A stretch of DNA of 58,060 nucleotides, counting the filler, from Dugesia japonica (lineage: Eukaryota): the NCBI GenBank assembly GCA_001938525.1. It is 5 parts of 5 records of this genome, joined end to end, with 100 filler letters (N's around TTAATTAATTAA, not from the genome) between each part and the next. Parts side by side here need not be neighbours in the genome. Positions count along the whole stretch, not along the records: positions 10,842 to 30,036 come from MQRL01606696.1; 4 more parts are not named here. One strand, given 5' to 3'. A model generated the notes under the pieces. That model did not search any database, was not told where the DNA came from, and worked only from the letters and a program-made list of their open reading frames with translations. Every line of letters starts with the position of its first letter. Position 1 is the first letter of the stretch. Below are positions 12,937 through 30,036 of the stretch, piece after piece. The translations under genes and the position numbers were made by a program.

Positions 12937-15900
12937 TTACATATGTACTAATCTTAAATGCCACATTTCACATGTTTCACAATAATATTTATTTCCATGT
13001 GGCCAAGTTTTTGCTCCATTATCTTCTATAATTCTTTTATCGTCATAACCCATTAATGCTATCTTTTTTTGTTCTACTATTTTAATTTCATGTAAATTTG
13101 ATCTTAATGAAAAATTATTTCCATAAATTATTTGTTTAGGATTATTTAATACTTCATCAAAATCTTTCATCAACATTTTATTATTTTTCTTTACACCTTT
13201 ATTTCTTGAATCAAATCTTGGTATATTGTCTTTATCAAAATAACTATAACCATAAGATTTTGCTTTTACAAAATCACCTTGAATTATTTCAGAATTAGGC
13301 ATTTCATCTTTCATCTGAAATAAATCATTTCCCAATAAACTATCCAACTTTATTAAATTATCTCTACCTTTTATCTCAACAAAGATACAATCAGTATCTG
13401 AATAATGAATTTTATAATTATCATTTCCAATTAATGGATCCATTTGTTCAAATATAAAATTATACATTACTTGTTTTGCATGTTCAAGAATTGTGAAACC
13501 TATATATGGAAATTTGTTATATCTTAATTTACCTTTTGTCATGAGCATTGCTGCTACATTAGTTTCATTAAAATCATTTATTGTAAAGATTTTACTTGAT
13601 TTAAAATTTATTTTAGATGCAAACGTTTGATATGCTTTGTCATTATCTACAATTTCTATGCTACACCTATTTCTAATATTTTCAAGTGTTTTCCATAGAA
13701 AGCATTTAACATTAATTTATAAATGTAATCACCAAAGACATCACTATTTCTTTTAGCTTCTTTTCTTAAACCTATTAATTTGAGAACATGATTTTTAAAC
13801 CATGGAGATGTTCTCATTGAAATTTTCTTGTGAATTTTTTTTAGTTTCATTCCACGTTTTAAATATAAATCTAATGTACTTCCTACAACTAGATAATTTT
13901 TCTTATCAAATTGATTAAGTGTAAGTTTAACATTATTCACTCCAATTTTCTTATTAAAACTTTTTTGGTAATTACTTATCATGTCTCGTGTAATATTTAT
14001 TCTTTCAGGTGCTAATGGAAAATATTTTGTTTTGTCATGTATTTCTCTTGGATAATCTAAATCAACTTCATAAATAAAATTAATGTTATCAGTTGAAATT
14101 TCATATTCTAGCTCGCTGCACTCGCTCATTTCACCTGTTGGTAATGTTCTAGTCATACAACTTGCATATAAAGAATTTTCATCAATATATTTTATAAATG
14201 TATCATCTAATAAATTTTCAAGATATTCATCTGGAATAAATTCATGTGTATTCATCATTTTTATTAAATCTTCAAATTGTGCTTTATTTAGTTGTCTTGT
14301 ATCTGGATCTTTATTTTTGTTATGTGCAAATACTTGTCTTTCTCCTAAAACTCCAGAATATCCACCTCTAATTCCTTCTTCAACTAATAAGAAAATATCA
14401 TAAGTATTTGGTTTCGCATATTTTAGTTTACATTAGCATTTAACATTCCTGTTTCCCATGCATAACCTGGTGCTGAATATGAATATGATGCATCTAATTT
14501 TAAAATATTGTTTAAACATGAATCTCTAAAGTTTTCTAAGAAATCTGCTAAAATTAAAACATCTAANTTCATATAGTGTAACATGTAACACCACATATTA
14601 TCAAAATTATAAAAGTCTTCTAAAAATATTTTATAGTCTTCATCAGATATTTCTTTTTGTGAAAGTGTATTAAAGAAATCTTGTTTTACTGGTATTCTGT
14701 TAGATTTTAATAATTCTTCAACTTGTGTGATATTATTACCTTTTACATATTCATATGGAAAACTTATTTTCTTAGGTCTTAAATTAAATAATTTTAAAAT
14801 TGGATAATTATTTGATTGTGTTAATAATGTTCCCATTACTTCTACTGATGTAAATGGAAGTAATCTTGCAGAATCTAAAAATTTAATATTTCCAAATTCA
14901 AATGAAATATAATTATCTGAAGAATGTGGAATTATTTTTTGAACTGATGATGAAAACTTTGTTAATAATTCTCTAAAGAATAAATGATTGTCATAACCTG
15001 ATGCATTATGGAAATAAAATGGTATAAATAAATTTTTAACAGAAAGATAATTTAAATTACAATTATTACATGACCATCCTCGAAATTCTCCAGTGAAATG
15101 ATTATGGTCTTTAATTGGAGTTCCATATATTTCATTTTCACAATATCTACATTTTGTGCCTTCGGACAATTCTGGAACTTCACCAATAACTTGTTTTATT
15201 AATTTATTTTCTTTAATGTTTTGCAATTCATCATTAACTTCTTCTAAAAACTCAAAGAAGTCTTCATAAATGTATTCACCTGAAAATTCATAATAATAAC
15301 TTAGGAATAAATCTTGATAATCACTTTTGAGATAAATCCCTAATAATGCTTTTTGTTTTTTATCTGAATTTGTGTAGGCTTCAAAATCTCCAATAAGAAT
15401 AAATGGTATTTTATTTTTCTGATAATATTTCTTAAAAGAATAATAATCTTCATATGGAAAAATAATATTATTTGGTTTGTGTTTAATACAAAATTCTTGA
15501 TGTTTCTTTAAAACTTCTTCATCTGAATAACAGTTCATACATCGTATGCATGGATAATTTGAGTTTCTATTTTCTGATGTAAAAAATACAGTTAGATCTC
15601 TACATAAAATATAATGATCTTTATACGCTAACAAATTACATTTATTACTCTCTGGATCTGGTTTTATTGTGTAATGTGAAATGTGTAGTGGTTCAAGTTT
15701 TTTATTAACATTTACACCAAACACATTTATTTCTAAATTATTTTTTATTAATTAATTTTTATTTCATCTACATTCATAGGAAATTTAAAACCACTATATT
15801 TTAATTCTGTTAAATGTGGAATATAATTATCTACACGTTTTGGATGATCAACTATATACTTATGTGCTAAAATTGAATTTAGAAAACATTTGTCATCTTT

Positions 15901-16728
15901 ATTTTCTATGTTAATTACTCCTTGTTTTTTAAATGGTAATTAGAATATGTTGCACCAGCTAATGATTGATATTTAGAAAGATCTAATTTATAATCAATTA
16001 TGTGTGACATACTCCATCCTGAGCCTTCTCTATCTTCATCTTCAATATATCTTTGTAACTCATTAAATATTTCATTAACAACATTTTCAATTTCAGTTAG
16101 AACTGTAAATCTTTTAGTTATAGAATATGATGTACAATCTCTTTCAGCATTTTCATTATTTATTTCTTTTGTATATCTACATTTAACTGACATACTTATA
16201 AGAATCTTTTTTCCATAATTAAAATACTTTGTAATAATTTCTTTAACTTCATTTTGAAATGTGTTAATTAATATCTCTAAATGGTTGTGTGAATATTTCA
16301 TCCACATTTAATTTCATTGTCACTTTGCTTTCCTTGAAATATTCAATTTCATAATTTTTATATTGTCTTAATAGATCTCTAATTTCTGGTTCATAATCAA
16401 TCGCTTCTTCACCTGGTAATTCATCATATAAAACTTTATTAACCATTTGTTTATGTTTCTCAGAATTATAATGTGCTCTTGCATGATTTTGTCTTTGAAA
16501 TCTTTTATTACAAATTTCACAAAATAATGGAACAATCTCTAGATTGCCATAACGTGTAGCATTTAAATGTTCTTGTAAACCATTTTCTGAATTAAATGTT
16601 TTATTACATCTTTCACATCGAAATGTCTCATTTGTTCTAAAACAAATTCTAGATCTAACATGTCCAATTAAACCGGCTTTATTTTTAAACACTTTATTAC
16701 AATTTTCACATCTTATTATTGGACTCAT
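12937..16728 (-). pseudogene. polB: Protein-primed family B DNA polymerase (pPolB) with N-terminal C2H2 fingers and endonuclease-VII-like insert, frameshifted
   Basis: Fragments contain three C2H2 fingers, EGSGW, DFEA (Exo I), DHNHFTGEFRG..CNNCN, FHNASGYD (Exo II), FLDS, FPYEY, DENSLY (motif A), KLMLNAFYGK (motif B) and YSDTD (motif C). Confidence 0.93.
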
Positions 16729-16879
16729 TTTCTATAGTATAAATTTAATCACACCTACTAAAAAAGTGGGTGCCGCAAATAAAACGTTTTTTTCAATCCT
16801 TTTTTTATTTTTATATTATTTGGTATTTCCTCTTAAATAAAAATGCGCGGGTATTTTATGGCGCAAAATCGATATTTAA

Positions 16880-17165
16880 AATTTGACATTTTTTACATCT
16901 CATTTTTTACATCTAAAATTTTACATCATAAATTTTACATCATAAATTTTACATCTCAAATTTTACATCACAAATTTTACATCTCATTTTTTACATCTCA
17001 AATTTTACATCATAAATTTTACATCACAAATTTTTGCATCAGAAATTTTACATCATAAATTTTACATCAGAAATTTTACATTTCACATTACAAATTTCAC
17101 AAAAAAATTTTACATCACACATTACAAATTTCTCATTACAAATTTTTCAAAAAAAATTTTACATA
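16880..17165. repeat. Subterminal tandem array of ~15-bp AAATTTTACATC(A/T)CA units in the Polinton end
   Basis: Direct reading. Confidence 0.85.
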
Positions 17166-17376
17166 AAAAATGAAGGGTACCCCCTTGGAAGTAAATCGTA
17201 TTATTACCATTACTTATATTATATTATACAATTATATTATATTATATATTAAAATTAGATGACGATAAGAATAAGAACTAACAACTACATGTTACATGAT
17301 TGGATTATTTTCATAATCAATTAATTTGCACACATTAATTTGGAAGTATTATAATCATTTTAAATTGAAATATCAG

Positions 17377-17520
17377 GATGTTAAAACATGTTGATTATGT
17401 GAATAAAAAATCCGATGAGTTAGAAAATACTTTTGTTGATAATGAGAATAAAAATAAAATATCCAACTCAACTGGAAAAAATTGTATTTATTCCATTGAA
17501 ATCGATGACTGTGAAACAAG
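17377..17520 (+). CDS. Possible isolated host exon
   Basis: TATCAG/...AAG/GTAAAT boundaries with an open frame (MLKHVDYVNKK...CET); no recognisable motif. Confidence 0.3.
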
Positions 17521-17924
17521 GTAAATGTATTTTATTTGAATTTATTAAAGTATGATAATTTGAAATAAATGAAATCAATATATATCAAAGTATTATTAGT
17601 AAAACATGATTATGTACAATAAATAGTTTATTCACACATAAATAATATAATTCTAAAAATTGAATTAATGTTTGTTAAAAATTTCTACACTATTAAAACT
17701 ATTGTGCTGTTAAAATAATTTTGAAATAATTTAAATAATTCTTATCGAAAATATTAATAGTGTATCGATATAATAATGTCTTATTCCAGCATATTTTGAC
17801 CTTGTTGTAGTGAATGTCAAAGAATCTACTGTAAACGGTGTTGATAGTTTTAAATAAATCTGCCAGCAAACTAAAATGAAGCGTGAATAGTAAAGAGTGA
17901 AAGTTTAATTACGCTAAATTTTTG

Positions 17925-18932
17925 AGACTGCCATGGTGAGCAGCTAGGTTCTATTACTCCGATTTTTACCAATTTGGCTGTTTCCTTATTTGCAAATTCT
18001 TTTTTCTCTACTGTCATGGCATATGGTTTCTGTTTGCATGGTGTTTCGTCTGTTAATGGAATTGTATGCATTTTCGCGGTGCACATACCCAGTTCCTCAT
18101 CTGTCCATGCAAAAATGTCTCGAAATTCCTCTAGTAATTGCAGTATTGCTTGTTTCTGATCCTCCGTTAAAGTCTCCGTCTCTACTTTAAATGTTCTGTC
18201 GATTTCTGGTTCAGTGGCTACTTCGTCTATCACGTCAGGTTCTGGTTCGATGGGTGTTAATGTACCCATTCTGGAATTTGGTTTGATTTTGATGTCTTTT
18301 TCCGTGAAATTAATCAGACTAACTGGTATTTCTCCACTTTTGTTGACCGTAGTTATTCCGCCTGCTGTGGGCAACTCATACTGCCGCGCAAATCCGTCAT
18401 ATGGTTCAAAATAACAATCTCCTTCGTAGGCACTTTTGGTACTGACTACGCAGTATACCTGGCATCTACTGGGCACCAAAATTTCTTCTGTGGTAAATAC
18501 TTCGTGATCCTTCACATGGGTATAGCCTTCCAATGATTGTAGCCTTAATGTGGAGAAATTCAGTATACCGTTTTTCATCAGGATGGGAAGAATATCCGTT
18601 CCTAGGATACACTGTCCCATCATTTCTACAATGATCATATTGTGTTTAATTTTGTTATCCTGATATTCAACTTCACAGGCCGATTCTCCAAAAATTTTGA
18701 GGCTGCTACTATTTGCCACATCTGCTGTAGTGTTAGTGGGTAATATATTTTTATATTCTGTTATCGCAATTTCATCTATTGACAGCAACGATATGGTGGC
18801 TCCGGTGTCCACTAGTGCTATTATGGNNNNNNNNNNNNNNNNNNNNNTAATGGTTAATACTGGTCCCCCATTGAGGCTTGCACATACTACATCTGAAGGG
18901 TTATGACTGTAGTTTGATTGTGTTTTGCTTTT
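17925..18932 (-). pseudogene. pol: Pol N-terminus: aspartic protease (PR2), dUTPase-like region, start of RT; truncated
   Basis: ALVDTGATISLL..ILGTD; 'EILVPSRCQV...IPVSLINFTEKDIKIKPNSRMG'; 'IFAWTDEELG..HTIPL..PCKQKPY..GVIEPSCSPWQS', then abrupt transition to AT-rich host DNA. Confidence 0.9.
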
Positions 18933-18942
18933 ACTAGAGTAA
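18933..18942. repeat. Left inversion-boundary repeat ACTAGAGTAA
   Basis: Exact reverse complement of TTACTCTAGT at 21985-21994; lies where the coding strand switches. Confidence 0.75.
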
Positions 18943-21398
18943 TTCGGATTGTGCGAGATCAGTTTAATAAAATCGAGAACGGGTGGACGCGTGGACCTCG
19001 CCGAAACTCATGGCATGCATTAACCACCACAATACTTTTGTTGTTCTTAATGATGGGCAGAAGCGAAGCTATCCTAGCATATGATTGAGATGGGATGCAA
19101 GTTTGGAAAGAGGTATTCTCATTAGTAGATACAGAAGAATGCCCAGATGCAAACCCAGAGAANNNNNNNNNNNNNNNNNNNNNNNNNNNNNNNNNNNNNN
19201 NNNNNNNNNNNNATTCTATTTATCATTTATATCAAGAATCCGATTATTATAAGGCCCAAGTACGCGAGTGCTCAGTAACGGTGAGACCGTTCATATTTCA
19301 TTGTGGTTATTATAGTTATACGTTAATAATCGACCCCAGAACAGTGAGACACCCTGTACATCTAACCGGACAACAATGCGATGAAGGATTCTCCACAGGG
19401 AAAATTACCATGAAACATGGGACTCAAGTTGTTGCCAAGAAAGGACATGTAATCGACCAACCTATAGAAGCAGCAGGAAGCATATCCACTCATAAAGGCC
19501 ATGGTACCTACACCATACGAGGGAAGGTATGGACGTATGCGGTAGCAATAGAAACCTATACCGTGGAACTCAAGGAATATGAAGCGTTTTTCGATGCTCA
19601 AGATTTGACGATTAAGGGAAGATCGTACTGCAAGGCAGCCGATGGATCATGTAATACAGGCACATCAACATTGACATACAAAGTGGAACACCAGGACTGT
19701 AAGTTGGCACATCTAAAGGAAGCCGTGTTTAATGAATACCAAGGACAACGCGCTATAACACCTATTGACCAAACCCCAAAAGAGGGTAACCTAAAGGAGA
19801 GAATAGATATTATCAAGGAAACAATAAGGACAGGTCCGAAGTCGTATGACCAGCAATGGCATACAACGCCGACGGTGCTAATGTCTTCGGAACAGGACGA
19901 GACTATCCGTCTAATTAAAGGAAATTCAATGTCAAAGTGTGGGCAAATAGTATTCAAAACAAACTATAAAGGAATATTCGTGTCTGAACATCGAATAAGA
20001 ATGGCGAAAGCCGCAGTAATGTCCCAAGACATCAAATTACACCTTTACACCAACAATAAACTGGACAATATACTTCGCCAAATGCAAGATACCATCAGAC
20101 GAATGTACCACGACCTCATTCAAAATGACTGCACGTTAAACAAGGAAATATTAAAGACAAAATTAGCAATGACAGTTACGAACCCTGACAGTGTCACTCC
20201 ATTACTCCCATTGAAAAAGGGACAATTGGGTCGAGTGGTAGGAGAAGTGATGTACTTATATAAATGCAAGGCCATTGATGCCGAATTCTCGTCAAATCCG
20301 AAACACTGCTACAATGAGATAGAAATTATTCACAACAACGAGAAAAGATACGTACAACCAATTACTCGAATAATATCGCCGTTGGGCTATAGGTCGAATA
20401 TCATAAATTGCTCTAATGTATTTGGACCACAATACGTAATGATGGATGGGTCATGGATAAGATTCCCTCAACGAATGGCAGTAGGAGTCGAACCACGAAA
20501 ATTTTCAATGTTACAACTAAACGGGGGCATGCAATTCACCCCAATCGATATAAATAAAGGAGGGATCTATAGCAGAGAAGATTTAGAAAAAGCAAGGGAA
20601 TATATGTTGTTCCCAGTCCGAAGAATGCAAATTCTCTCAAATATAGTACAATTAACCAGTGGGACCAACATCGACGGACGAGTAAATTATGACGCATTAC
20701 TATCAGCAGACCACTTTCAAAAAGCCACCGAAAATGTCATGAGGAAAATGTGGGGAAGATTCATAATATTTGGCCAAGCAATGGCAGGGTTGTTGGGAGT
20801 TATGTTGATAATTTCAGTAGCACGAGTAGTGATCACGCAATTATTCGCATGTTTCGATATATATAAAAGAGAGAAAAAGGTGAATTGGAAAATGGTAACA
20901 GGAATATTTCCGTTTTTAGCCAAAACTATNNNNNNNNNNNNNNNNNNNNNNNNNATCGACAGAGTAAAGAGATTCATTCGGAAGCTCGGACAAATAAGAG
21001 GATCAGACAAGGAAGTTATAATGCAACTCAGACTATTATGTGAGGAAATGAGCAACGCTACGAAGAAGATATCATATTTCAACCAATTCAAAGAAAGGTT
21101 TAAAAACAAGGACGAAAGTAGCAGCAACAGCGATGATGATAGAGGAGAAAACAGTGGAATACCACATGTACCCAGTTATAAAACCGCTATGGAATATGAG
21201 GCAGAGTTCAAAAGGCAGCAATACGAAAAGATCAGCAAGATGCAACGACTAAAGAACGCGTTAAAATTCGGAGGAGGAGAAAGCACGCCAGCACCAGCAC
21301 AAATGTACTATAACGCGTATCCACAACACGGTTGGCAACCCATGAACCAAACACCACAACCAGTATGGGCATTAGGCCCTATGTACAACAATCCGTAA
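18933..21398 (+). pseudogene. env: Envelope glycoprotein, chuvirus/herpes-gB-like class III fusogen, with internal signal sequence and TM anchor
   Basis: In-frame upstream of the 767-aa ORF is ALTTTILLLFLMMGRSEA-ILAYD*(C) (signal plus YDC start, with TGA at the Cys position). Conserved Cys pattern: CSV..FHCG, C..G.C, NDC..K..L, GEVMYLYKC..CYNE..YVQPITRI..INCS..PQY...W. TM segment FIIFGQAMAGLLGVMLIISVARVVI. Confidence 0.85.
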
Positions 21399-21974
21399 AT
21401 AAGCTCACTACAAGCCCCGAATCTGACGTTGATAACTGAAAACAGTGTGTCGACTATAGACAGAAGGGTAATCGAACAAAACCTACGCACTCCGCATAAT
21501 CAGATAACTGAGGATGATAAATTAGAAACACAAACGGTATGTATGATGATGCCCCAGAGAGCGAAATTACTACAAAAAAGGATAAAAATCGACGGAAGAT
21601 GGGTAATAGCTATTATTGATACAGGGGCAAGTACGACGTTAGTTCATAAAAGGATATTAGAAGATTATCGCCTACTTAGAATAACAATTAATAAAGGAGT
21701 TATTATCACGGCCTCTGGANNNNNNNNNNNNNNNNNNNNNNNNGCAATATGTGCAATAGAAAGCGATGGAACTCGATTCTGGCATAAACTGCAGATAATG
21801 AACGAATTAGCATTCGATTGCCTATTAGGGTTGGACCTCTTACCACGCCTTTGTCCGGATGGAATATTGAATTTGAGCAAATTAACCACACGAGAAAATT
21901 ATAATCAGGAGTATGCACCGATAGGTTTTCGGAAAACTCGAATAATAACACAACCGAAACGACAATTCTTTTAA
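21399..21974 (+). pseudogene. Second retropepsin-like aspartic protease (PR1), in frame with env after a single stop
   Basis: IAIIDTGASTTLV...DCLLGLD; ORF 21429 is in the same frame as 19095. Confidence 0.85.
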
Positions 21975-21984
21975 CACAATTCTT

Positions 21985-21994
21985 TTACTCTAGT
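21985..21994. repeat. Right inversion-boundary repeat TTACTCTAGT
   Basis: Reverse complement of 18933-18942; adjacent 12-bp tandem duplication ACAATTCTTTTA. Confidence 0.75.
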
Positions 21995-22046
21995 TTATAT
22001 GAGAAGGTTGAGGTTTAGGACAGATGGCCTCAATAAACTTCGTCCA

Positions 22047-25000
22047 TCACCCCTGTTGCTTTATTAATGACACTATTTTATTCTGCATTAGGTTCACTAT
22101 TGGTAACTTACTGAGGATGAAGTTTTTTGACGGCTTGCATCGGGCATTTGATAGATGCGTTTGATTAATCAGATGTGCTATAGATACTACTATCCTTCCT
22201 TTTGTTGGCTGATCCTGTAATAACTCGTCCATGACTCCTTCTAAATTATCTCGAGTACCGTGACTAGTGCCTTTGGTGGCAGGAAATCTCTTAATAGCTG
22301 CTTCTATCTCTTTTACTAGTGGTCTGAGACTATCTGACAGTTGGAATTTTCCAATCCATATTTTTAATTCTGAATATAACATTAGCAATAATTGTCGTAT
22401 TACTACTTCGGTTGGCATATCATCATCTGTTGAAGTTTCGTGATATCTTTCTTGTGATAACGTTGCTAATCGCTTAGTTTGATGGCTTATTGACGTTGTT
22501 AATCGTTTTTGTTTCAATGCCTCCTCCTCCTCAGGATTTCCTGGAGGTTTCGTCCTTGGTCGACCTCTATTACGAGGTTCGGTAATCGTTTCGGCATCCA
22601 CTCTGGTACGTACCGGTTTTGGTGGTACCTCTTCCTCTTCTGTTTCTATTGGATTCTCCATCTCTAGGGGGTGGTTTGTATCTAGTAAATCATCCATTAC
22701 CGAGTATGGTAATTCCTTTGCTATTTTACTTAATATTGGTGACAAAGGTTGGTCTTCCAATATGTCATCCTCGTCTAAGTCGACCTTGCTAGGGTCATAT
22801 TTTTTGTTTCGTATTGGTCTTTGTTTCTTCAATTTTTCTAATTGGGGGGGAATATTTTGTAATTTGTAACTCGTTTCCGTCTTCCGCTGACTCATCTGCT
22901 GATGGTGATCCGAATATCTCACGCTCCCAATCTTGGCTTGTTCGTGGAGTCTCTTTTGTTTCTCTGGACGTTTCTGTACTTCCTGATTGATCTGTGGTAG
23001 GCCTTAATATCTGACTAGCCGTTAGTTGTGTACGGAGTTTATGTGCTTTTAGCATACTTGAAGTTTCCCCCATTATCGGTCTGATTTTATCCGCTGCTTT
23101 ATAAGGATCTGCATCTTTTCTCGTGAGAGTACCTCCTAATTCAGGAAAAATCCACAACGTATTAAGTTTAACTAAGTCTATTTTCATTAGTCCAATTGTT
23201 GTGGTATCTTCCCCCACTCCGCTTTCATCCACGAGTCTGTATGGTGGTTTAAATGGTAACTTGTCTCGTAGGTGTTTTACCGTATTATATACCGGTATTT
23301 TAATCGGGATTTTGTCTCCTTCAGGATCTATTATTCGAAATTTAACTTCCAATGGTGTGGCTTGCCCTATCTCCGCTTTCCGCCATTTGACCAGAATTTT
23401 ACTAAACTGAATGGGATCCCATAAATGCGCTGCTTTGATGGCTAGAATTAATTGTCGCCATTTTCTGAGATCTTCTACTGCCAGATCTTGTTGTAAGGCT
23501 ATATTGCATCGTCGTATGATTTCTGGTTTTACTAATTTGTCCCATACTAATAATTCGAACAATTTTGGCAAATTGTCTTCTGGCTACTCGTCCCTGACCG
23601 GGGTGTTGGTCAGAGCCGCTACCATCTCTACTCGTTGTTTATTTTGTTCTTGTTTGGGAAGTTTGGCTCTAGCGAATACTAATGGATGTATCTCTTCTAT
23701 ATAATATTCCACCAACTCTCTAGCTTCCTGTTTCCATTTTTCCTCCGAAACTCGTGGTCGCCGTCCCTTCTCATTCTTTGCAGTTACATAGATTTTTAGT
23801 TTAGTGCCTGGCCAAACCCCCATGTATTTTACCGGCAACCTCATTTGATCTGGTTCTATTACGTGGTTGTAGTAGAGTACTATATCGTCTTCTTGAACTG
23901 GTGTTGGTGCTCCAGTTTCCTCCTCGTTGAGGATACGTTGTTGATTCATAAATTTTACAATCCACTTGCGCAACTTAGCCCATGGTTCATTCATTTGGAT
24001 CTGCCATTGAATTTCACTTGCATCTGGGAATTTTATTATTACGTTGACGGTTTTGTTGGCTATCATACGAACTGCTTTATTTAATATCGCATCCATTATG
24101 TCCTCCGGCATTTGACTTATAGCTCGTAGTTGATTTAGCTTTAGAACTAATTGGATGACTTTGTCATGTCTTAATAGTTCCAAGTTTTCTTCCAATGTTA
24201 AGAGTATTTTCATTATTACTCGCGCCAGACTTCCCCATGTTTTACTGTCTTCCCATAACTCAATATTTATTTCCATTGTTCTGTCGTCGATTACTTCGAA
24301 TAACTGCCCCCCGTTGATATCTTGTTCATACAATCTCTCCAGTTGTTGTACTACTTCCCCCATAGGTTTTACTGGACCTGGGATGTAGTCCTCGGGTTTC
24401 TGTATTTGGAGAAGTGTATTTTCACCGGGTCTTAACCCGACGTCCAGTAAATGTTGTTTCCCCTCGAACTTTATGGGAAATCTCAAGTGATTGCTGGTAA
24501 TCACATAGCCTTTCTGTTGATCAGCTATATCCAGTGATTCTATAATTTCCTGTTTTCTCCTGCTGACGTGCTATTGAAATGTGGTATATGCATGACAGCC
24601 AATTCTGGTTCCCTCCTCGATTTCTTGTTTGGAGTCAGATATTCTATCGTGATATTCAATCTTCTCCCTGAGCACTTGCTTTCACTGCCCCAATGTATGG
24701 CTTGATTACGGATTCCCACCTGGCGCGATCTTCTCTTGCTAATTCAGTTAGCTTTGTCAGATCCATTAATAAATTTAATGCTTTCCAAAATGTTGTCCTA
24801 GGTATCCTTTCCTGGAAATAACAGAAATCCGAAATTATCTTCGCGATCCGCTCCGTCTGAGGAGAACTAAAAGGACCAGCGAATTCAGGTTTAAAGGGTA
24901 ACAATCGAGGTTGACCCTTATTCTCTGAGATTCCCCCCTCCTGCTCTTCTTCATCTGAAGTTAGGTCTGGGGTGTTAGGGTCATTATCCCGAACCATGTT

Positions 25001-27460
25001 TATCTGAGCTTTGTGTTCTCCATAAGTGTTTATGAGTCGTTCATTTTCTACCGGTAATATTTCTTGTAGATATAAGCTCATCATATTAAATATGAGTTGA
25101 TCGGTGTCTGGCATTTTCGGTATCGGAAGGTCTACCGTCATTTTACGTGATGTTAGTTTGATTTCTGTGATCTCTCCTGGCTTGATATCATGGAGGAAGA
25201 TGTGATCCGCTTTTTCAGCTAACAGGATCGTTGTTGCTCCCGCCTGCATTTTATAGGATTTGATCGATTTTGGCCATAACCATTTTTTATAGGTTTCAAA
25301 ATGTGTCGGATAGTTAATCCTTCCAAGGTTATCATATCTTCCTTTTTTATGTGCCCTTCCTTGTTGAGCAGACTAACTCTGATGGAGTATTCGGATATGG
25401 TGGAGGTATTTTGTACTTCTTCTTCGTATAAATTTTTCTCCTTCCACCATTGGGCACGGGCCCACAAGCTAAGTTGTCCATAGGTTGCCAAATCTCGTAG
25501 GTTGATCATCATCTTCCAATATACTTTGATATTCACCACCGGGCGTGTTTCGCGTGTTACTCTCATCAAATCATTGATAGCGTGAAATGTGGCGGATTCC
25601 TCTGTTATTGGTTTGGTATAGTTCATCCGAATATCGCGTATGGTTGGCGTCCCTTCTGGAAACACAACTGCCTTTGTAGTACTTATTGGTAGATTATCAA
25701 TATTCTGTAGTTTCTGATTTTCTTTTATTTGTTCCTTCATACCTGACAACACTTCAGTTACGTATATTTCTGTTATCTCTTCTATCCTTTCTTCAAGGTC
25801 TGGCGATGGAACTGTTCGAGTTTCTTCCTCCACATCTAGTTCACATATCTCTCCAGGTTTTGAGTGACATTGGAATATATGTTTGTCCTCGTCATCTGTT
25901 TCTACCAATTTGCCATTTATGAACAGGGGTACCATATTTAATCCTTGTTCTCGCCACTTATCGGTAACGGCATCCATTAAATCCATCATGGTTATTCCTT
26001 GTGGTTTTAATCGGCTATATTTAGTCAATTCTTGTTCATTTTTACCTATATTCAAATATAATTGATAGTTCCGAATTTTGGTAGTTGCTAATATTTCTTC
26101 GGCATATTTGCCTAATCATGAGCCATTGGTTTTCGATTTCTTCTGGTATCTCTAGTCCATCGTATATGTCGTAAATTCTATTCATTATCATCCAATAAGT
26201 TTTTCGGGGTAAGTTCTCCTTTTCCATTTGTACCCGATTAACCATTTCTTCCACCTTGCGCATTGCTACTACCTCTCTTGACGGCATCTGTCGCATTCTT
26301 ATCATGTTGCATTTATCTTCTCTTCTCTCTAATCGTTGTCTGAGGAAGTCATTACGCGTCATTAGCAACTGTTTCCTTTCCTCCTTTGTCAGTTTATCCT
26401 TCTTTCCGAGGACCGTGGAAAGTATTTTGATTTTAATTGGCTCTACCCCTTGTTTATATAGATATTCCATTTCTCCCATGATTTCTAAAGCTGATCTACC
26501 AGTTTTCGTTACCCATACGTCATAATCGATACCTGGGTGTTTGTCCAATATTACTAGTTCGATTTCCTCTCCTGGTTTTATTCCGAAATTGTAGATATGT
26601 CTTTTTCTGGCATTAAAATCCACTATTGCACTTGGAGTACATACGTATTTACTCATCACACAGGGATAACCTGCTTGATTGAGTGCCGCTTCTAGATCTT
26701 CTACCATTAGCCCCGTGAGTGTCAATTTCATATTACCTTCTGGGTTATACAACCATACTTGGTAATCCGATAAGCCCATATTGGATATTACCCAATCGTA
26801 ATGTACTGGTAACCATTCTGTCCAATCACTTTCTTCAGTGGTTATTAATTTTATAACTTCCAATAGCTCCACCAATCGATTTGTCAGTATCATGGAGTTT
26901 CTGGGCGGCTACCAATATCTCATCAATTCGGGCTAATGATAACCTTGATGCCTCGATTTGTCCCAATTCTAGGTGGTCCATTAGCCTTACTGTCCCCAAC
27001 CTTTTCCGCATGTATGTTTGTGACTGGAGGGGCACAATTTCTTTTAAGAATGTTTGCTCGAGATTATGATATAACTCGCCTGTTTCTATTTCTTGAATTA
27101 CTATTTGGGGTCTGAACACTAATCCCCAGTTAATTAACTTGATTATGGTTATTTCATAAGGTCTTGCCCCATAATAGATTAAGTTCTTATCGCCTGGGGT
27201 AATATTGATTCCGATATTGCCGATTTGTATTCTATGTCTATTCCACTTCGTATTCCATTATTGCTGGTCATTAAATGGTAGTGCGTCGAAGATTGGGTTT
27301 ACTGCCATACCCTTAATGCCGTTCACCTCTCCCCGTTTTATTTCGTTGATTGCTTCCTTTAAGTGTCGCACCGTCATTCCTTTTAATGCGAGCTTTAGTC
27401 GCTTTGGAGCTACCTCTGGGTTGTTATGCCATACATATTGAATTTCGAACTCATAGTCTT
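22047..27460 (-). pseudogene. Gag-extension polyprotein: tandem ubiquitin-like plus helical modules, then a low-complexity/AT-hook-like region and a helical domain
   Basis: Abutting or overlapping same-strand ORFs joined by single stops or frameshifts. A recurrent [H/L][I/L]xxxGx[K/R]PGE-x-x-x-[L/I] motif appears every ~600-750 bp. RGRPR is in the 22047-22922 ORF. Confidence 0.7.
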
Positions 27461-29250
27461 CTAGTTGGGTTTCTTGATACAGCTCGGTAATATAGTCCGA
27501 TATCGTTTTCTGCCAATTAGCCCTTACCTTGGCGTGTACTTGAGGGTGCTGATATAGTCGGAGCAACTGGTTCATCACCCGTCTTCTTCCGGTGGTTNNN
27601 NNNNNNNNNNNNNNNNNNNNNNNNNNNNNNNNNNNNNNNNNNNNNNNTGTTTTGTAGATGATCTCTTCAGTCCAGTCAAATTCTGGTGACGTAATCAATA
27701 TTCGCTTTCGAGTATCTTCCATCTCGGTGACTTCCGTTGTTTCGTCATATTGGTTATAGATTTGCCTGTGTGTCCTGATCATATTACACTGATTCTTGTG
27801 TGGTTCGTTTAATAAGTTCCTTTTGGCTAGTCTCTCCTGCTGTACCTGCAGATCTTGGTTTTGCCACTTAAGCCAATCATTTTCCTGTTTCACCTTGTGG
27901 TACACATTGTCAAAAGTATTTTGATGTACTAAATTAATTTGTCCCTTATTTTGATTTACTCGTTGCCTTAATCTCTCGTTTTCCTCCATTAGATTATCTA
28001 GCTTCGCATTCTGATTCCGATTATAATTGGTTTGATTTCCGGCTTGACATTCTTTTGCCATATGTCCTCTTCTATTACATTTATAACATACNNNNNNNNN
28101 CTTCAAAAAACACGTTTCCACATTGTGGTTGGTCTTCTTGCAATAGGTACAGAATCGATTGTTGTTACTATTATTGCCTCTACTTCTACAGTTGCGGGAT
28201 ATGTGTCCTCTTCTTCCACACGTATTGCATTGGATGTCTCGATTATTTTGCCAATTATTCCGAGGTGCATTAAATCACCCATTATTTACTCTAGGATAGT
28301 TAGGTCTATCATTCCGGTTGTTTCGTTCCTGTCCTGGGGTCAGGGTTTTCATCATTGATTGTGTATTGGGTATAAAATCTGATATTCGCGGTGTGGTTTC
28401 CTCAGTTTGTCCTTCCCCTTTGAATATCCGTTCGGATGGTCTGTCTGCCACGATTAGCAATGTAGCCAGCGCATCCTGCAGTGTTACTGGTTTACTCAAT
28501 TTTACCATCAGCTTAGCATTCTCATCGCGTAATCCATTTAAGAATATGGCCAATACTTGACTGTCTTCCAATTTGTCTCCTAACACTAATTTGCCGCGAC
28601 TCTTAAGTTCCATCATGTACGCCTGTGGCGTTTCGCCTTTTTGTTGTTTTCGATTAGTGAATTGTTCGAAATCTTGACCGGTTAGTTTCAAATTTTGGAA
28701 ATTGTCAATTAGTATTTTTACCACCTCTTCCCATTTTTCGGGGATGGACTCCATGCCTTTAGTGTGATCCCAAAATACAGTTTTGGCCACTCCTGTTAAG
28801 TAAGCTGGTAACCGCTTTCTTTTTGTTTCCTCATCCCATCCACAGGTTTTGGCGTACATTTCGTAATTTTGAATAAATTCGTCCAATTTTTCAGGTATTC
28901 CACCAAAATATTCGCCATCGAATTTTATTTTCCACTCTGGTCGATGGTTTTCAGTTTTGGTTGTCATGTTGCTATCTTTTGCTGTGTTTGTTTCTATTTT
29001 CGGGTTTTGACTTGTTATCGTGTGGGTTTCTGTTTCTGACTCGTTTGTCGGTATTACTAGTGCGTTGGTGCTTCCCTGGTTATTGTCAGTTACTTCTATG
29101 ATTTCTTGTTCCTCTGATGTATAACTTAATCCGCTTGATCGATTACTATTCTCTGGAGTTTTATTAGATGTGGTTTTTTGGTTGGTTTGAGCTGATGGTT
29201 TCTAGTGTTTTGGTTTTAGATAGCGCGGTGGCTTTGTCGAATTCCGATTT
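27258..29250 (-). pseudogene. gag: Gag: capsid domain plus three CCHC zinc knuckles
   Basis: FGG..EKLDEFI..YE..W....RLPAYLTGVA..W...KQQKGETPQAY..L...FLNGL. In frame past one TGA (28275): CNTCGRRGHISRNC, CTYCKKTNHNVETC, CYKCNRRGHMAKEC. Confidence 0.9.
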
Positions 29251-30036
29251 TTTTAGTAAACAAATATTCTCGTCCGGGTCTAAATAAAGAGATGTCTTTT
29301 TTAGTTTCCTTGAAGACTTTTGTCGGGTGAGTTGGGTTTCTTTTAGAACTGAGCTTGGGGTAGATATCCCGGATGTGTTAGACCTTGTAAGTGGCTTCCT
29401 GTTTTCTGAGTCGGAATCTATCTTGTCAGAGTCCGGCTAGTTGGTTTCTTGTTGTACTTCGGTTTTGTTTTCGGGTTACTTGTAGCTTAGGTTTCTAGAA
29501 TAAAAATTTCTCCTTATTGTCTTTTCTGAGGAGGCAATCACTCCTTTTCCAGATTTTAAACTTACTTTATTATCATGCTGCTCAACACTTGTCATCATAG
29601 CCCCGCAACCATCTTCCTTTGATTTAATTACGTATACATTTAATCTTCCTTTAATTTTATTTTAATTTTCCTTAAATAAGTCTTCCTTTAATCTTCTTTT
29701 TATGCTTCCTTAATTTCTTCCTAATTAATGCCAGGCTATTTCTTCCTAAATGTGGGAGTACCCATTTTTCTGTAGTATAGGCGAACTCTTCTGGNNNNNN
29801 NNNNNNNNNNNNNTTTAATATGCCGGGGTAACAGTGCACACTTTTAATAATTCTTCCTGGGGGAGTACCGAGAGTTTTCTGAGGGATCAGCGGTCCCATT
29901 TGGAGTACCCTTTTCGTGTAGGCGAACGCTTCCGGCTTCCTTTAATTCTTCCTCTAATCAGGTTCCTTTAGTGTGCTTAACTACGTGGCCTTCCTTTAAC
30001 ATACTGGTTAATGTGCTTAGGACTTCACGTATCTTC

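What the first reader, a model, noticed from the sequence alone, without database searches (positions are those of the whole stretch)
23130..27460. Array of ~7 diverged ubiquitin-like domains, six followed by a helical bundle, fused behind Gag
Seen: a motif recurs every ~200-250 aa: DKNLIYYGARPYEITIIKL (~27190), KRHIYNFGIKPGEEIELVI (~26600), DKHIFQCHSKPGEICELDV (~25890), DHIFLHDIKPGEITEIKL (~25205), KQHLLDVGLRPGENTLLQI (~24455), RLPVKYMGVWPGTKLKIYV (~23840). Most are preceded by a strand-strand-'G[ML]T[VI]xxL' helix start. The first six units are followed by a helical block starting [YF]xxE[IV]xP-like and often ending in W-rich helices. The last unit (LEVKFRIIDPEGDKIPIKIPVYNTVKHLRDKL...LNTLWIFPELGG) ends in LGG. 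Established: this matches the beta-grasp Ubl signature (D-x-T-L-x-D-Y-G-I-x-x-G-x-x-I-x-L) and di-Gly terminus. Inference: an ancient internally amplified Ubl-helical cassette, perhaps BAG1-like in layout. It could act as a host deubiquitinase cleavage signal, a proteasome/chaperone adaptor or an anti-defence decoy. I know no LTR element with such an array.
Basis: partly seen in the sequence, partly recalled or inferred. Interest (0 to 1): 0.88.

Follow-up and report, generated by a model that had tools for sequence, protein, structure and literature searches.

The report
Repeated module array in retroelement Gag
A dead copy of an LTR retroelement carries six, perhaps seven, old tandem copies of a ~230-residue two-part module between its Gag zinc knuckle and its protease; no database searched holds a relative, and the idea that the modules are ubiquitin-like could be neither confirmed nor excluded.

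Summary
Three separate short motifs keep register at a period of about 590-750 nt. Pairwise and profile HMMER against 3,400 shuffled decoys supports units 1-5. Unit 6 is supported only by two motifs at the family spacing. Unit 7, the one ending in LGG, has no statistical support.

The array is physically fused to Gag: the CCHC knuckle, a first helical block and the start of unit 1 lie in one open stretch. The copy is dead, with about nine stops and frame changes. Its RT is cut off and a foreign fragment lies on the other strand.

The ubiquitin-like reading stays unproven:
- No Pfam hit appeared even at E<=10, and no PDB sequence or profile hit was significant.
- Two AlphaFold models were poor (pLDDT 50 and 43). 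One showed strand-strand-helix-strand-strand.
- No Foldseek match was significant.
- LGG alone is expected 0.35 times by chance.

No relative of the array or of this Gag turned up in the protein, viral-contig or metagenome collections searched.

Verdict: a real, orphan, anciently amplified accessory region of a Ty3/Gypsy-like Gag-Pol. Its fold and function remain open.

The parts
22047..28967 (-). Broken gag-array-tail gene of an LTR-type retroelement, given as one part. It has three in-frame stops, at least five changes of frame and at least one further break (about nine in all). The last frame change may be the natural gag/pol shift. Two N-masked stretches of 50 and 9 nt lie inside it.
   Evidence: Only the minus strand carries long open pieces. 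GC (0.38-0.41) and AT skew (-0.24 to -0.31) are uniform from about 22000 to 29800.
28401..28895 (-). Gag capsid-like domain, Ty3/Gypsy type
   Evidence: Pfam Ty3_capsid E 4.3e-05 and Retrotrans_gag E 5.4e-05, both just under the curated cut-offs. PDB phmmer finds the Drosophila Arc1/Arc2 capsid domains at E 6e-04 to 2e-03.
28044..28091 (-). CCHC zinc knuckle (nucleocapsid)
   Evidence: Pfam zf-CCHC E 1.7e-05, 25.1 bits against a cut-off of 20.8. It is in the same frame as the capsid domain.
27459..27992 (-). Helical block H0, directly after the knuckle and in the same open stretch. It resembles the helical blocks of units 2 and 4.
   Evidence: blastp/phmmer of 27854-27459 against 25060-24662 gives iE 0.027, and a 22-aa patch is 50% identical. 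It is aligned in A7.
26777..27458 (-). Cassette 1: strand-rich module (about 27458-27123, longer than the others) followed by a helical block
   Evidence: Motifs A, B and C lie at 27380, 27164 and 27050. phmmer to unit 4 gives iE 0.019-0.025 against a best decoy of 0.5-0.9.
26072..26776 (-). Cassette 2: strand-rich module (26776-26537, unbroken) followed by a helical block
   Evidence: Motifs lie at 26713 and 26578. phmmer to unit 4 gives iE 0.0035 against a best decoy of 0.2. AlphaFold predicts five helices in the block at pLDDT 55-73, while the strand-rich module is unresolved at pLDDT 30-50.
25393..26071 (-). Cassette 3
   Evidence: Motifs lie at 25998, 25860 and 25764. blastp to unit 4 gives E 4e-06 over 171 aa in the small local database; phmmer gives iE 0.054-0.12.
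24646..25392 (-). Cassette 4
   Evidence: Motifs lie at 25320, 25183 and 25072. It is the hub of the pairwise matches.
24049..24645 (-). Cassette 5. Its N-terminal half is not recognisable and the start is approximate.
   Evidence: Motif B lies at 24432. The profile of units 2-4 hits 24462-24304 at iE 0.0018 against a best decoy of 0.15.
23356..24048 (-). Cassette 6. Its strand-rich module (24048-23773) is unbroken and carries an insertion. It is supported by motifs only.
   Evidence: Motif B at 23814 and motif C at 23703 are 111 nt apart, as in units 1 and 4. The profile hit is in register but not significant (iE 57; hhalign P 0.35).
23131..23355 (-). Candidate seventh strand-rich module ending in LGG. 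It has no helical block after it and no statistical support as a member of the family.
   Evidence: Read directly from the sequence. hhalign P 0.13. The AlphaFold model has pLDDT 43, with elements E6-12, E18-24, H29-35, E42-46 and E55-57 followed by coil. Foldseek gave no match at E<=0.001.
22047..23130 (-). Tail after the array. It is low in complexity, rich in charged residues and Ser/Thr/Pro, and has no family hit.
17871..18812 (-). Retropepsin, then a dUTPase-like domain, then the first residues of RT. This is probably the pol start of the same element. It is separated from the tail by a plus-strand fragment, and the RT is cut off where AT-rich DNA begins.
   Evidence: A DTGA motif is present. 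Pfam dUTPase E 0.0013. PDB dUTPases match at E 2.4e-04 to 1.2e-03 over residues 71/96-185, and retroviral PR-RT at E 0.04. Composition matches the gag-array region. That it belongs to the same element is inference.

Best explanation
Shown: this is a decayed copy of a Ty3/Gypsy-like LTR retroelement. The stretch of polyprotein between the nucleocapsid zinc knuckle and the protease was built by ancient tandem duplication of a ~230-residue two-part cassette. Each cassette has a 75-110-residue strand-rich module followed by a ~130-150-residue helical block. There are six cassettes, plus a helical block before the first and a possible seventh strand-rich module after the last.

Inferred:
- In the active ancestor the array was translated as part of Gag or Gag-Pol, so it was packed into every particle alongside capsid and nucleocapsid.
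- Only a few short motifs survive while the rest has drifted to 15-31% identity. That pattern points to selection on a fold and on a contact surface, not on catalysis.
- I therefore read the cassettes as multiple protein-binding adaptor modules of an extended Gag. They would engage host trafficking or ubiquitin-system partners during assembly or exit, and they were possibly separated by the element's own protease.
- The strand-rich module has the order of elements expected of a small alpha/beta roll, and a beta-grasp is the best single guess (about 40-50%). It is not shown to belong to the ubiquitin family.

The copy in this window can do nothing: it is broken about nine times and its pol is truncated.
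For: - Fusion to Gag: the knuckle, block H0 and the start of unit 1 lie in one open stretch, in the frame of the capsid domain.
- Repeat.
- Old age of the duplications: no DNA repeat of 40 nt or more, and 15-31% identity between units.
- Helical block: five predicted helices at pLDDT 55-73.
- Strand-strand-helix-strand-strand order in the unit 7 model. Units 1-4 share a hairpin and then the G-h-T-h-x-x-L motif.
- Ty3/Gypsy-type Gag.
- Expected order Gag, knuckle, array, tail, then PR-dUTPase-RT on one strand with one composition.
- No canonical PTAP, PPxY or YPxL motif in Gag, array or tail. This leaves room for another exit signal, but it is weak negative evidence.
- Background: ubiquitin fused to a retroviral Gag can stand in for a late domain (PMC2958808, title and abstract).
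Against: - No relative was found anywhere, so conservation, and hence function, cannot be shown.
- Both structure models are of low confidence, and no fold match was significant.
- No ubiquitin-family or other beta-grasp model was hit even at E<=10.
- Units 6 and 7 are weakly supported or unsupported.
- That the protease/RT piece belongs to the same element is not proven, because a plus-strand fragment lies between.
- The function is inference only.
Confidence: 0.5

Rival explanations
1. The strand-rich modules are true ubiquitin-family (beta-grasp) domains, and the terminal LGG is a host deubiquitinase or SENP-type cleavage site that frees the Gag-array from what follows. The array mimics ubiquitin towards host receptors.
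For: - The order of elements is compatible with a beta-grasp: a hairpin, a helix, further strands, and a hydrophobic-G-x-KPGE-strand ending.
- The last module ends in LGG.
- Among the non-significant Foldseek matches to the cassette 2 model, two domain-swapped ubiquitin variants appear (E 3.2 and 6.0). The best non-significant PDB profile hit is staphylokinase, a beta-grasp protein (E 0.16). Both are hints only.
Against: - No Pfam ubiquitin-type family was hit by any of nine unit fragments at E<=10.
- No PDB ubiquitin-like chain was hit by sequence or profile.
- AlphaFold did not fold the module (pLDDT 30-50).
- Units 1-6 have no Gly-Gly at their ends, so they offer no deubiquitinase sites.
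- LGG is expected 0.35 times, and GG 3.8 times (4 seen), in these pieces by chance.
- Alignment A5 puts the family motif upstream of the LGG segment.
Confidence: 0.2
2. A Ddi1-like arrangement. Each cassette would correspond to the UBL plus helical domain that precedes the retropepsin domain in Ddi1/DDI2. The array would regulate the element's protease or feed it substrates.
For: - The order of modules (strand-rich, then helical, then further downstream a retropepsin) parallels UBL-HDD-RVP. The Ddi1 architecture is taken from PMC4962041, abstract.
- The neighbouring plus-strand retropepsin reaches the Ddi1-type Pfam model Asp_protease (E 8.8e-06, 26.3 bits against a cut-off of 26).
Against: - The protease that hits the Ddi1-type model is on the other strand and only 27% identical to the minus-strand one.
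- No Ddi1 chain appeared in the PDB searches with the cassette or with the helical-block profile.
- More than 350 residues of low-complexity tail, plus a rearrangement, separate the array from the protease.
Confidence: 0.1
3. The repeat is real but has no adaptor role. It would be a lineage-specific structural spacer or scaffold of an oversized Gag, or a captured host fragment that was amplified and tolerated.
For: The array is an orphan in all databases searched. Only short motifs are shared. Retroelement Gag-Pol spacers are known to vary freely (general knowledge).
Against: Three motifs have kept register through divergence to 15-31% identity, which argues for constraint on a fold. The array is in frame with Gag and has the same composition as the rest of the element.
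Confidence: 0.15
4. A chance pattern or an assembly artefact.
For: The motifs were picked by eye, and the pairwise E-values are modest.
Against: No shuffle of 20,000 reached the observed counts for three independent motifs. The HMMER matches are in register and beat nearly all of 3,400 decoys. There is no DNA-level repeat that an assembly error would produce.
Confidence: 0.03

Closest known systems
Ty3/Gypsy-type LTR retroelements (Metaviridae) with extended Gag or Gag-Pol spacer regions
   Same: Capsid-like Gag domain, CCHC knuckle, then retropepsin and RT on one strand. The A-rich coding strand also matches.
   Different: About 1,450 residues of repeated two-part cassettes lie between knuckle and protease. 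My literature and sequence searches found nothing like it. A dUTPase-like domain lies between PR and RT.
Ddi1/DDI2 (UBL, helical domain, retropepsin domain)
   Same: The order of module types: a small alpha/beta module, a helical block, and a retropepsin further on.
   Different: There is no sequence or profile match to the UBL or the helical domain. There are six or seven cassettes instead of one. The fold is unverified and a long tail precedes the protease.
   Same: A strand-rich module followed by helices.
   Different: No Pfam BAG or ubiquitin hit appeared. An Arabidopsis BAG4 chain appears only at Foldseek E 6.7, which is noise.
Polyubiquitin and ubiquitin fused to viral proteins
   Same: Head-to-tail repetition inside a precursor, and an LGG at the end of the last unit.
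   Different: Units are 15-31% identical to each other, are separated by ~140-residue helical blocks, and have no Gly-Gly between them. No ubiquitin family match was found.
Retroelements that captured a chuvirus-type glycoprotein ('Anakin', Pao family; PMC7642597)
   Same: A Monjiviricetes-type fusion glycoprotein lies next to retroelement genes in this piece.
   Different: Here the glycoprotein is on the opposite strand and precedes a different protease. The Gag is Ty3/Gypsy-like, not Pao-like. The paper does not mention ubiquitin (0 occurrences).

Membership tests
Ubiquitin family / ubiquitin-like beta-grasp domains | Match to a ubiquitin-type profile (Pfam ubiquitin and related families) | tested here: not met
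   Eight array and tail pieces gave no such hit at E<=1. Nine unit fragments gave none at E<=10.
Ubiquitin family / ubiquitin-like beta-grasp domains | Beta-grasp fold (a mixed sheet gripping one helix) | tested here: inconclusive
   The AlphaFold model of cassette 2 has pLDDT 30-50 in the module and no strands. The unit 7 model has pLDDT 43 and the order E-E-H-E-E followed by coil. Foldseek against PDB and BFVD gave no match at E<=0.001; the top hits are GYF domains at E 0.47.
Ubiquitin family / ubiquitin-like beta-grasp domains | C-terminal Gly-Gly directly after the last strand | tested here: inconclusive
   It is present only in the seventh candidate (LGG, 23139-23131). It is absent from units 1-6. 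Chance expectation is 0.35, and its position relative to the last strand is unresolved.
Ubiquitin family / ubiquitin-like beta-grasp domains | Similarity to a solved ubiquitin-like chain | tested here: not met
   phmmer and profile searches of the PDB returned no ubiquitin-like chain at E<=10.
Ty3/Gypsy LTR retroelement | Gag with a Ty3-type capsid domain and a CCHC knuckle | tested here: met
   The knuckle is above its cut-off. The capsid models score E about 5e-05, just under their cut-offs. Drosophila Arc capsids match at E 6e-04.
Ty3/Gypsy LTR retroelement | Pol with protease, RT, RNase H and integrase in that order | tested here: inconclusive
   Only the protease, a dUTPase-like domain and the first residues of RT are present. 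The rest is cut off by AT-rich DNA.
Ty3/Gypsy LTR retroelement | Two long terminal repeats | tested here: not met
   There is no direct repeat of 40 nt or more in the piece apart from an unrelated AT-rich array. The piece ends about 1.07 kb upstream of gag and the 3' part of the element is missing.
Ddi1-like proteins | UBL and helical domain recognisable by sequence, next to the retropepsin domain | tested here: not met
   No UBL hit appeared. No Ddi1 chain appeared in PDB searches with the cassette or the helical-block profile.
BAG-domain proteins | BAG three-helix bundle profile match | tested here: not met
   No Pfam BAG hit appeared. The Foldseek BAG4 match at E 6.7 is not significant.

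The most novel reading that the evidence does not exclude
The cassettes are true beta-grasp (ubiquitin-like) modules, each paired with a helical domain, amplified six or seven times inside a retroelement Gag-Pol just upstream of its retropepsin. That would be the first retroelement with a built-in ubiquitin-like array. It would act either as an in-cis substitute for Gag ubiquitination and late domains, or as a relative of the UBL-helical-retropepsin architecture of Ddi1.
Probability: 0.2. Interest if true: 0.8.

Novelty: new variant of a known kind. Interest (0 to 1): 0.5.

Why it matters
If the array is a functional part of Gag, it shows that a retroelement can enlarge its structural polyprotein roughly threefold by amplifying one accessory cassette. 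If the cassette proves ubiquitin-like, it would link retroelement assembly directly to the host ubiquitin system. It would also bear on the open question of how the UBL-helical-retropepsin layout of Ddi1 relates to retroelement proteases. As it stands, the value lies in flagging an orphan, internally repeated domain family that no profile library covers.

Tried and rejected
- Pfam on all open pieces and on nine unit fragments gave nothing relevant.
- PDB by sequence and by three profiles (strand-rich module twice, helical block once) gave only noise: staphylokinase at E 0.16, dynamin PH domains at E 0.016-0.18, and APC9 at E 0.4.
- Exhaustive HMMER of the cassette 2 piece against 1.84 billion representatives gave two hits. 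Both are spurious, produced by near-identical Fn3-type and other repeats stacking short matches.
- The word-indexed protein search found nothing for the cassette 2 piece or for Gag.
- Exact look-ups of two open pieces found nothing on record.
- Viral-contig and metagenome scans with the cassette and with Gag gave no relative.
- Gag capsid compared with the cassettes, to test for amplified capsid domains, showed no similarity.
- Two AlphaFold jobs with shallow alignments of the internal repeats both gave low confidence. All three Foldseek jobs were without significant matches.
- A scan for late-domain motifs found none.
- A MAFFT pairwise alignment of units 6 and 7 came out staggered and was discarded.
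- Units 1, 3, 4 and 5 are split by a stop or a frame change. I analysed their pieces apart and did not join them, so only units lying in one open piece could be folded.


Full report
**Layout**

The piece (10842-30036) falls into two parts by composition. From 10842 to about 17850 the GC content is 18-25%. From about 17850 to 30036 it is 36-41%.

In the second part the long open pieces lie on the minus strand from about 22000 to 29000 and again at 17871-18812. They lie on the plus strand from about 19000 to 22000. AT skew flips at the same places.

On the minus strand the order of features is:
- a Gag capsid-like domain. Pfam Ty3_capsid scores E 4.3e-05 and Retrotrans_gag E 5.4e-05, both just under cut-off. 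Drosophila Arc1/Arc2 capsid chains match at E 6e-04 to 2e-03;
- a CCHC knuckle, above its cut-off;
- the region of the finding;
- a low-complexity tail;
- beyond the plus-strand fragment, a retropepsin, a dUTPase-like domain (Pfam E 0.0013; PDB dUTPases at E 2.4e-04) and the first residues of RT.

This is the order expected of a Ty3/Gypsy-like Gag-Pol.

**State of the copy**

The gag-array-tail gene is broken by three in-frame stops, at least five changes of frame and at least one further break, about nine in all. The last frame change, before the tail, could be the element's natural gag/pol shift. Two short N-masked stretches lie inside the gene and were left as they are.

Pol is cut off inside the start of RT by the AT-rich DNA. 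The protease's N-terminus is masked. No RNase H or integrase is present, and no pair of long terminal repeats lies in the piece. I give no places for the breaks.

**Is the repeat real?**

Three different short motifs recur in a fixed order:
- Motif A, G[MLI][TM][VIM]xx[LI], occurs 4 times.
- Motif B, [KRW]P[GY][ET], occurs 6 times.
- Motif C, a [YF]xxE[IV]xP-like motif, occurs 4 times.

Motif B follows A by about 135-216 nt, and C follows B by 96-114 nt. Successive copies of motif B are 586-751 nt apart. None of 20,000 shuffles of the separate pieces reached any of the observed counts. The patterns were chosen after seeing the data, so these numbers flatter them.

Independent of the motifs:
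- All-against-all blastp of the separate open pieces gives in-register matches of 77-173 residues at 22-26% identity.
- phmmer against the pieces plus 3,400 shuffled decoys puts the true pairs (iE 0.003-0.05) ahead of nearly all decoys.
- A profile built from units 2-4 finds unit 5 at iE 0.0018, against a best decoy of 0.15.
- A profile of the N-terminal halves of units 1, 2 and 4 finds unit 3 in register, but only at the level of the best decoy.

Unit 6 is not significant by profile. It does carry motifs B and C at the family spacing of 111 nt.

Unit 7 is not detected by any statistic.

The helical stretch directly after the knuckle (H0) resembles the helical blocks of units 2 and 4.

There is no DNA-level repeat, and units are 15-31% identical to each other. 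The amplification is therefore old and was inherited by this copy.

Conclusion: six cassettes of 199-249 residues are supported. Five of them rest on alignment statistics and one on motif spacing. A leading helical block and an unsupported seventh module complete the array.

**Is it fused to Gag?**

Yes. The knuckle, H0 and the start of unit 1 lie in one open stretch. That stretch is in the frame of the capsid domain.

**Is it ubiquitin-like?**

Every test I could run was negative or inconclusive:
- No ubiquitin-type or other beta-grasp Pfam family is hit, even at E<=10 on nine fragments.
- No ubiquitin-like chain in the PDB is hit by sequence or by profile.
- AlphaFold on the open piece holding cassette 2, with a 7-row alignment of the internal repeats, gave pLDDT 50. 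The strand-rich module was unresolved at 30-50. The helical block came out as five helices at 55-73.
- AlphaFold on unit 7, with a 6-row alignment, gave pLDDT 43. It showed strand, strand, helix, strand, short strand, and then coil through the LGG end.
- Foldseek found nothing at E<=0.001 in the PDB or BFVD. The best matches were GYF domains at E 0.47. Two domain-swapped ubiquitin variants at E 3.2 and 6.0, and one BAG4 chain at E 6.7, are noise-level hints.

The order of elements, and the shared pattern of hairpin, then G-h-T-h-x-x-L helix, then strands, then h-G-x-KPGE-strand, are compatible with a beta-grasp. From general knowledge that is the commonest fold for a module of this size and order. 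I put it at 40-50%.

The LGG is not informative by itself. One is seen where 0.35 are expected, and GG occurs 4 times where 3.8 are expected. In alignment A5 the family motif aligns upstream of the LGG segment.

**Relatives**

None were found:
- The exhaustive HMMER search returned only two artefactual repeat proteins.
- The indexed protein search found nothing for the cassette or for Gag.
- Exact look-ups, viral contigs and metagenome contigs gave nothing.
- Full-text searches found no paper describing an LTR element with a ubiquitin-like domain.

Conservation, selection and host range of the family therefore could not be assessed.

**Mechanism**

Shown: the array is part of the Gag reading frame upstream of the protease.

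Inferred: it was made and packaged with Gag. Constraint on a few motifs through deep divergence points to a fold with a binding surface. The cassettes would then act as repeated adaptor modules during assembly or exit, possibly cut apart by the element's protease. A [CI]NM[IV]R pentapeptide recurs in three helical blocks and might mark such sites; I did not follow this up.

No PTAP, PPxY or YPxL motif occurs in Gag, array or tail. Ubiquitin fused to a retroviral Gag can replace a late domain (PMC2958808). Together these make an in-cis exit signal an attractive idea, but it is untested.

Rivals are the strict ubiquitin/deubiquitinase reading, a Ddi1-like regulator of the protease (architecture from PMC4962041), and a plain spacer.

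2. The script joined the open pieces in memory to count residue frequencies. The expected LGG and GG numbers come from that count. Nothing joined was saved or printed, and the same numbers follow from summing per-piece counts.

**Verdict**

The object is an orphan, anciently amplified accessory region of a dead Ty3/Gypsy-like element.

Noticed in passing
window 19095-21398 (+): An open 767-codon gene for a Monjiviricetes-type (rhabdo/chuvirus-like) fusion glycoprotein (Pfam PF24664, E 5.6e-76). It lies on the strand opposite to the gag-array gene, between the array's tail and the protease/RT piece. Only one relative exists in the 5.8-billion-protein set (P0003, 447 aa, 43% identity).
   Followed up: partly
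window 21429-21974 (+): A second retropepsin lies directly after the glycoprotein gene on the plus strand. It is only 27% identical to the minus-strand protease and just reaches the Ddi1-type Asp_protease model. Glycoprotein followed by protease is not the usual retroelement order. The 2.9-kb plus-strand block looks like a fragment of another element, inserted or inverted here.
   Followed up: partly
window 17871-18812 (-): A dUTPase-like domain lies between the protease and the start of RT (Pfam E 0.0013; PDB dUTPases at E 2.4e-04).
   Followed up: partly
window 10842 to about 17850 (-): Very AT-rich DNA (18-25% GC) with broken minus-strand genes: a protein-primed type B DNA polymerase (PF03175, E 1.3e-12), an endonuclease VII-like finger, and an ORF with three C2H2 fingers. 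It looks like a polinton/Maverick-like or linear-plasmid-like element, and it abuts and truncates the RT.
   Followed up: partly
window 16891-17171: A tandem array of a 14-nt unit (13.6 copies, 87% matches) with related 21-48-nt periods, lying near the inner end of the AT-rich element, between its last ORF and the junction. It may be a terminal repeat of that element.
   Followed up: no
window 29611-29990 (-): Upstream of gag lie short 'attaaaggaag'-type repeats (11-16-nt periods). A roughly 35-nt segment occurs twice, about 140 nt apart. This may be leader or LTR sequence. The piece ends before any LTR boundary can be seen.
   Followed up: no
window 27788, 26311, 25003 (-): The pentapeptide [CI]NM[IV]R recurs in the helical blocks H0, H2 and H4. 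It may be a shared processing or binding site.
   Followed up: no
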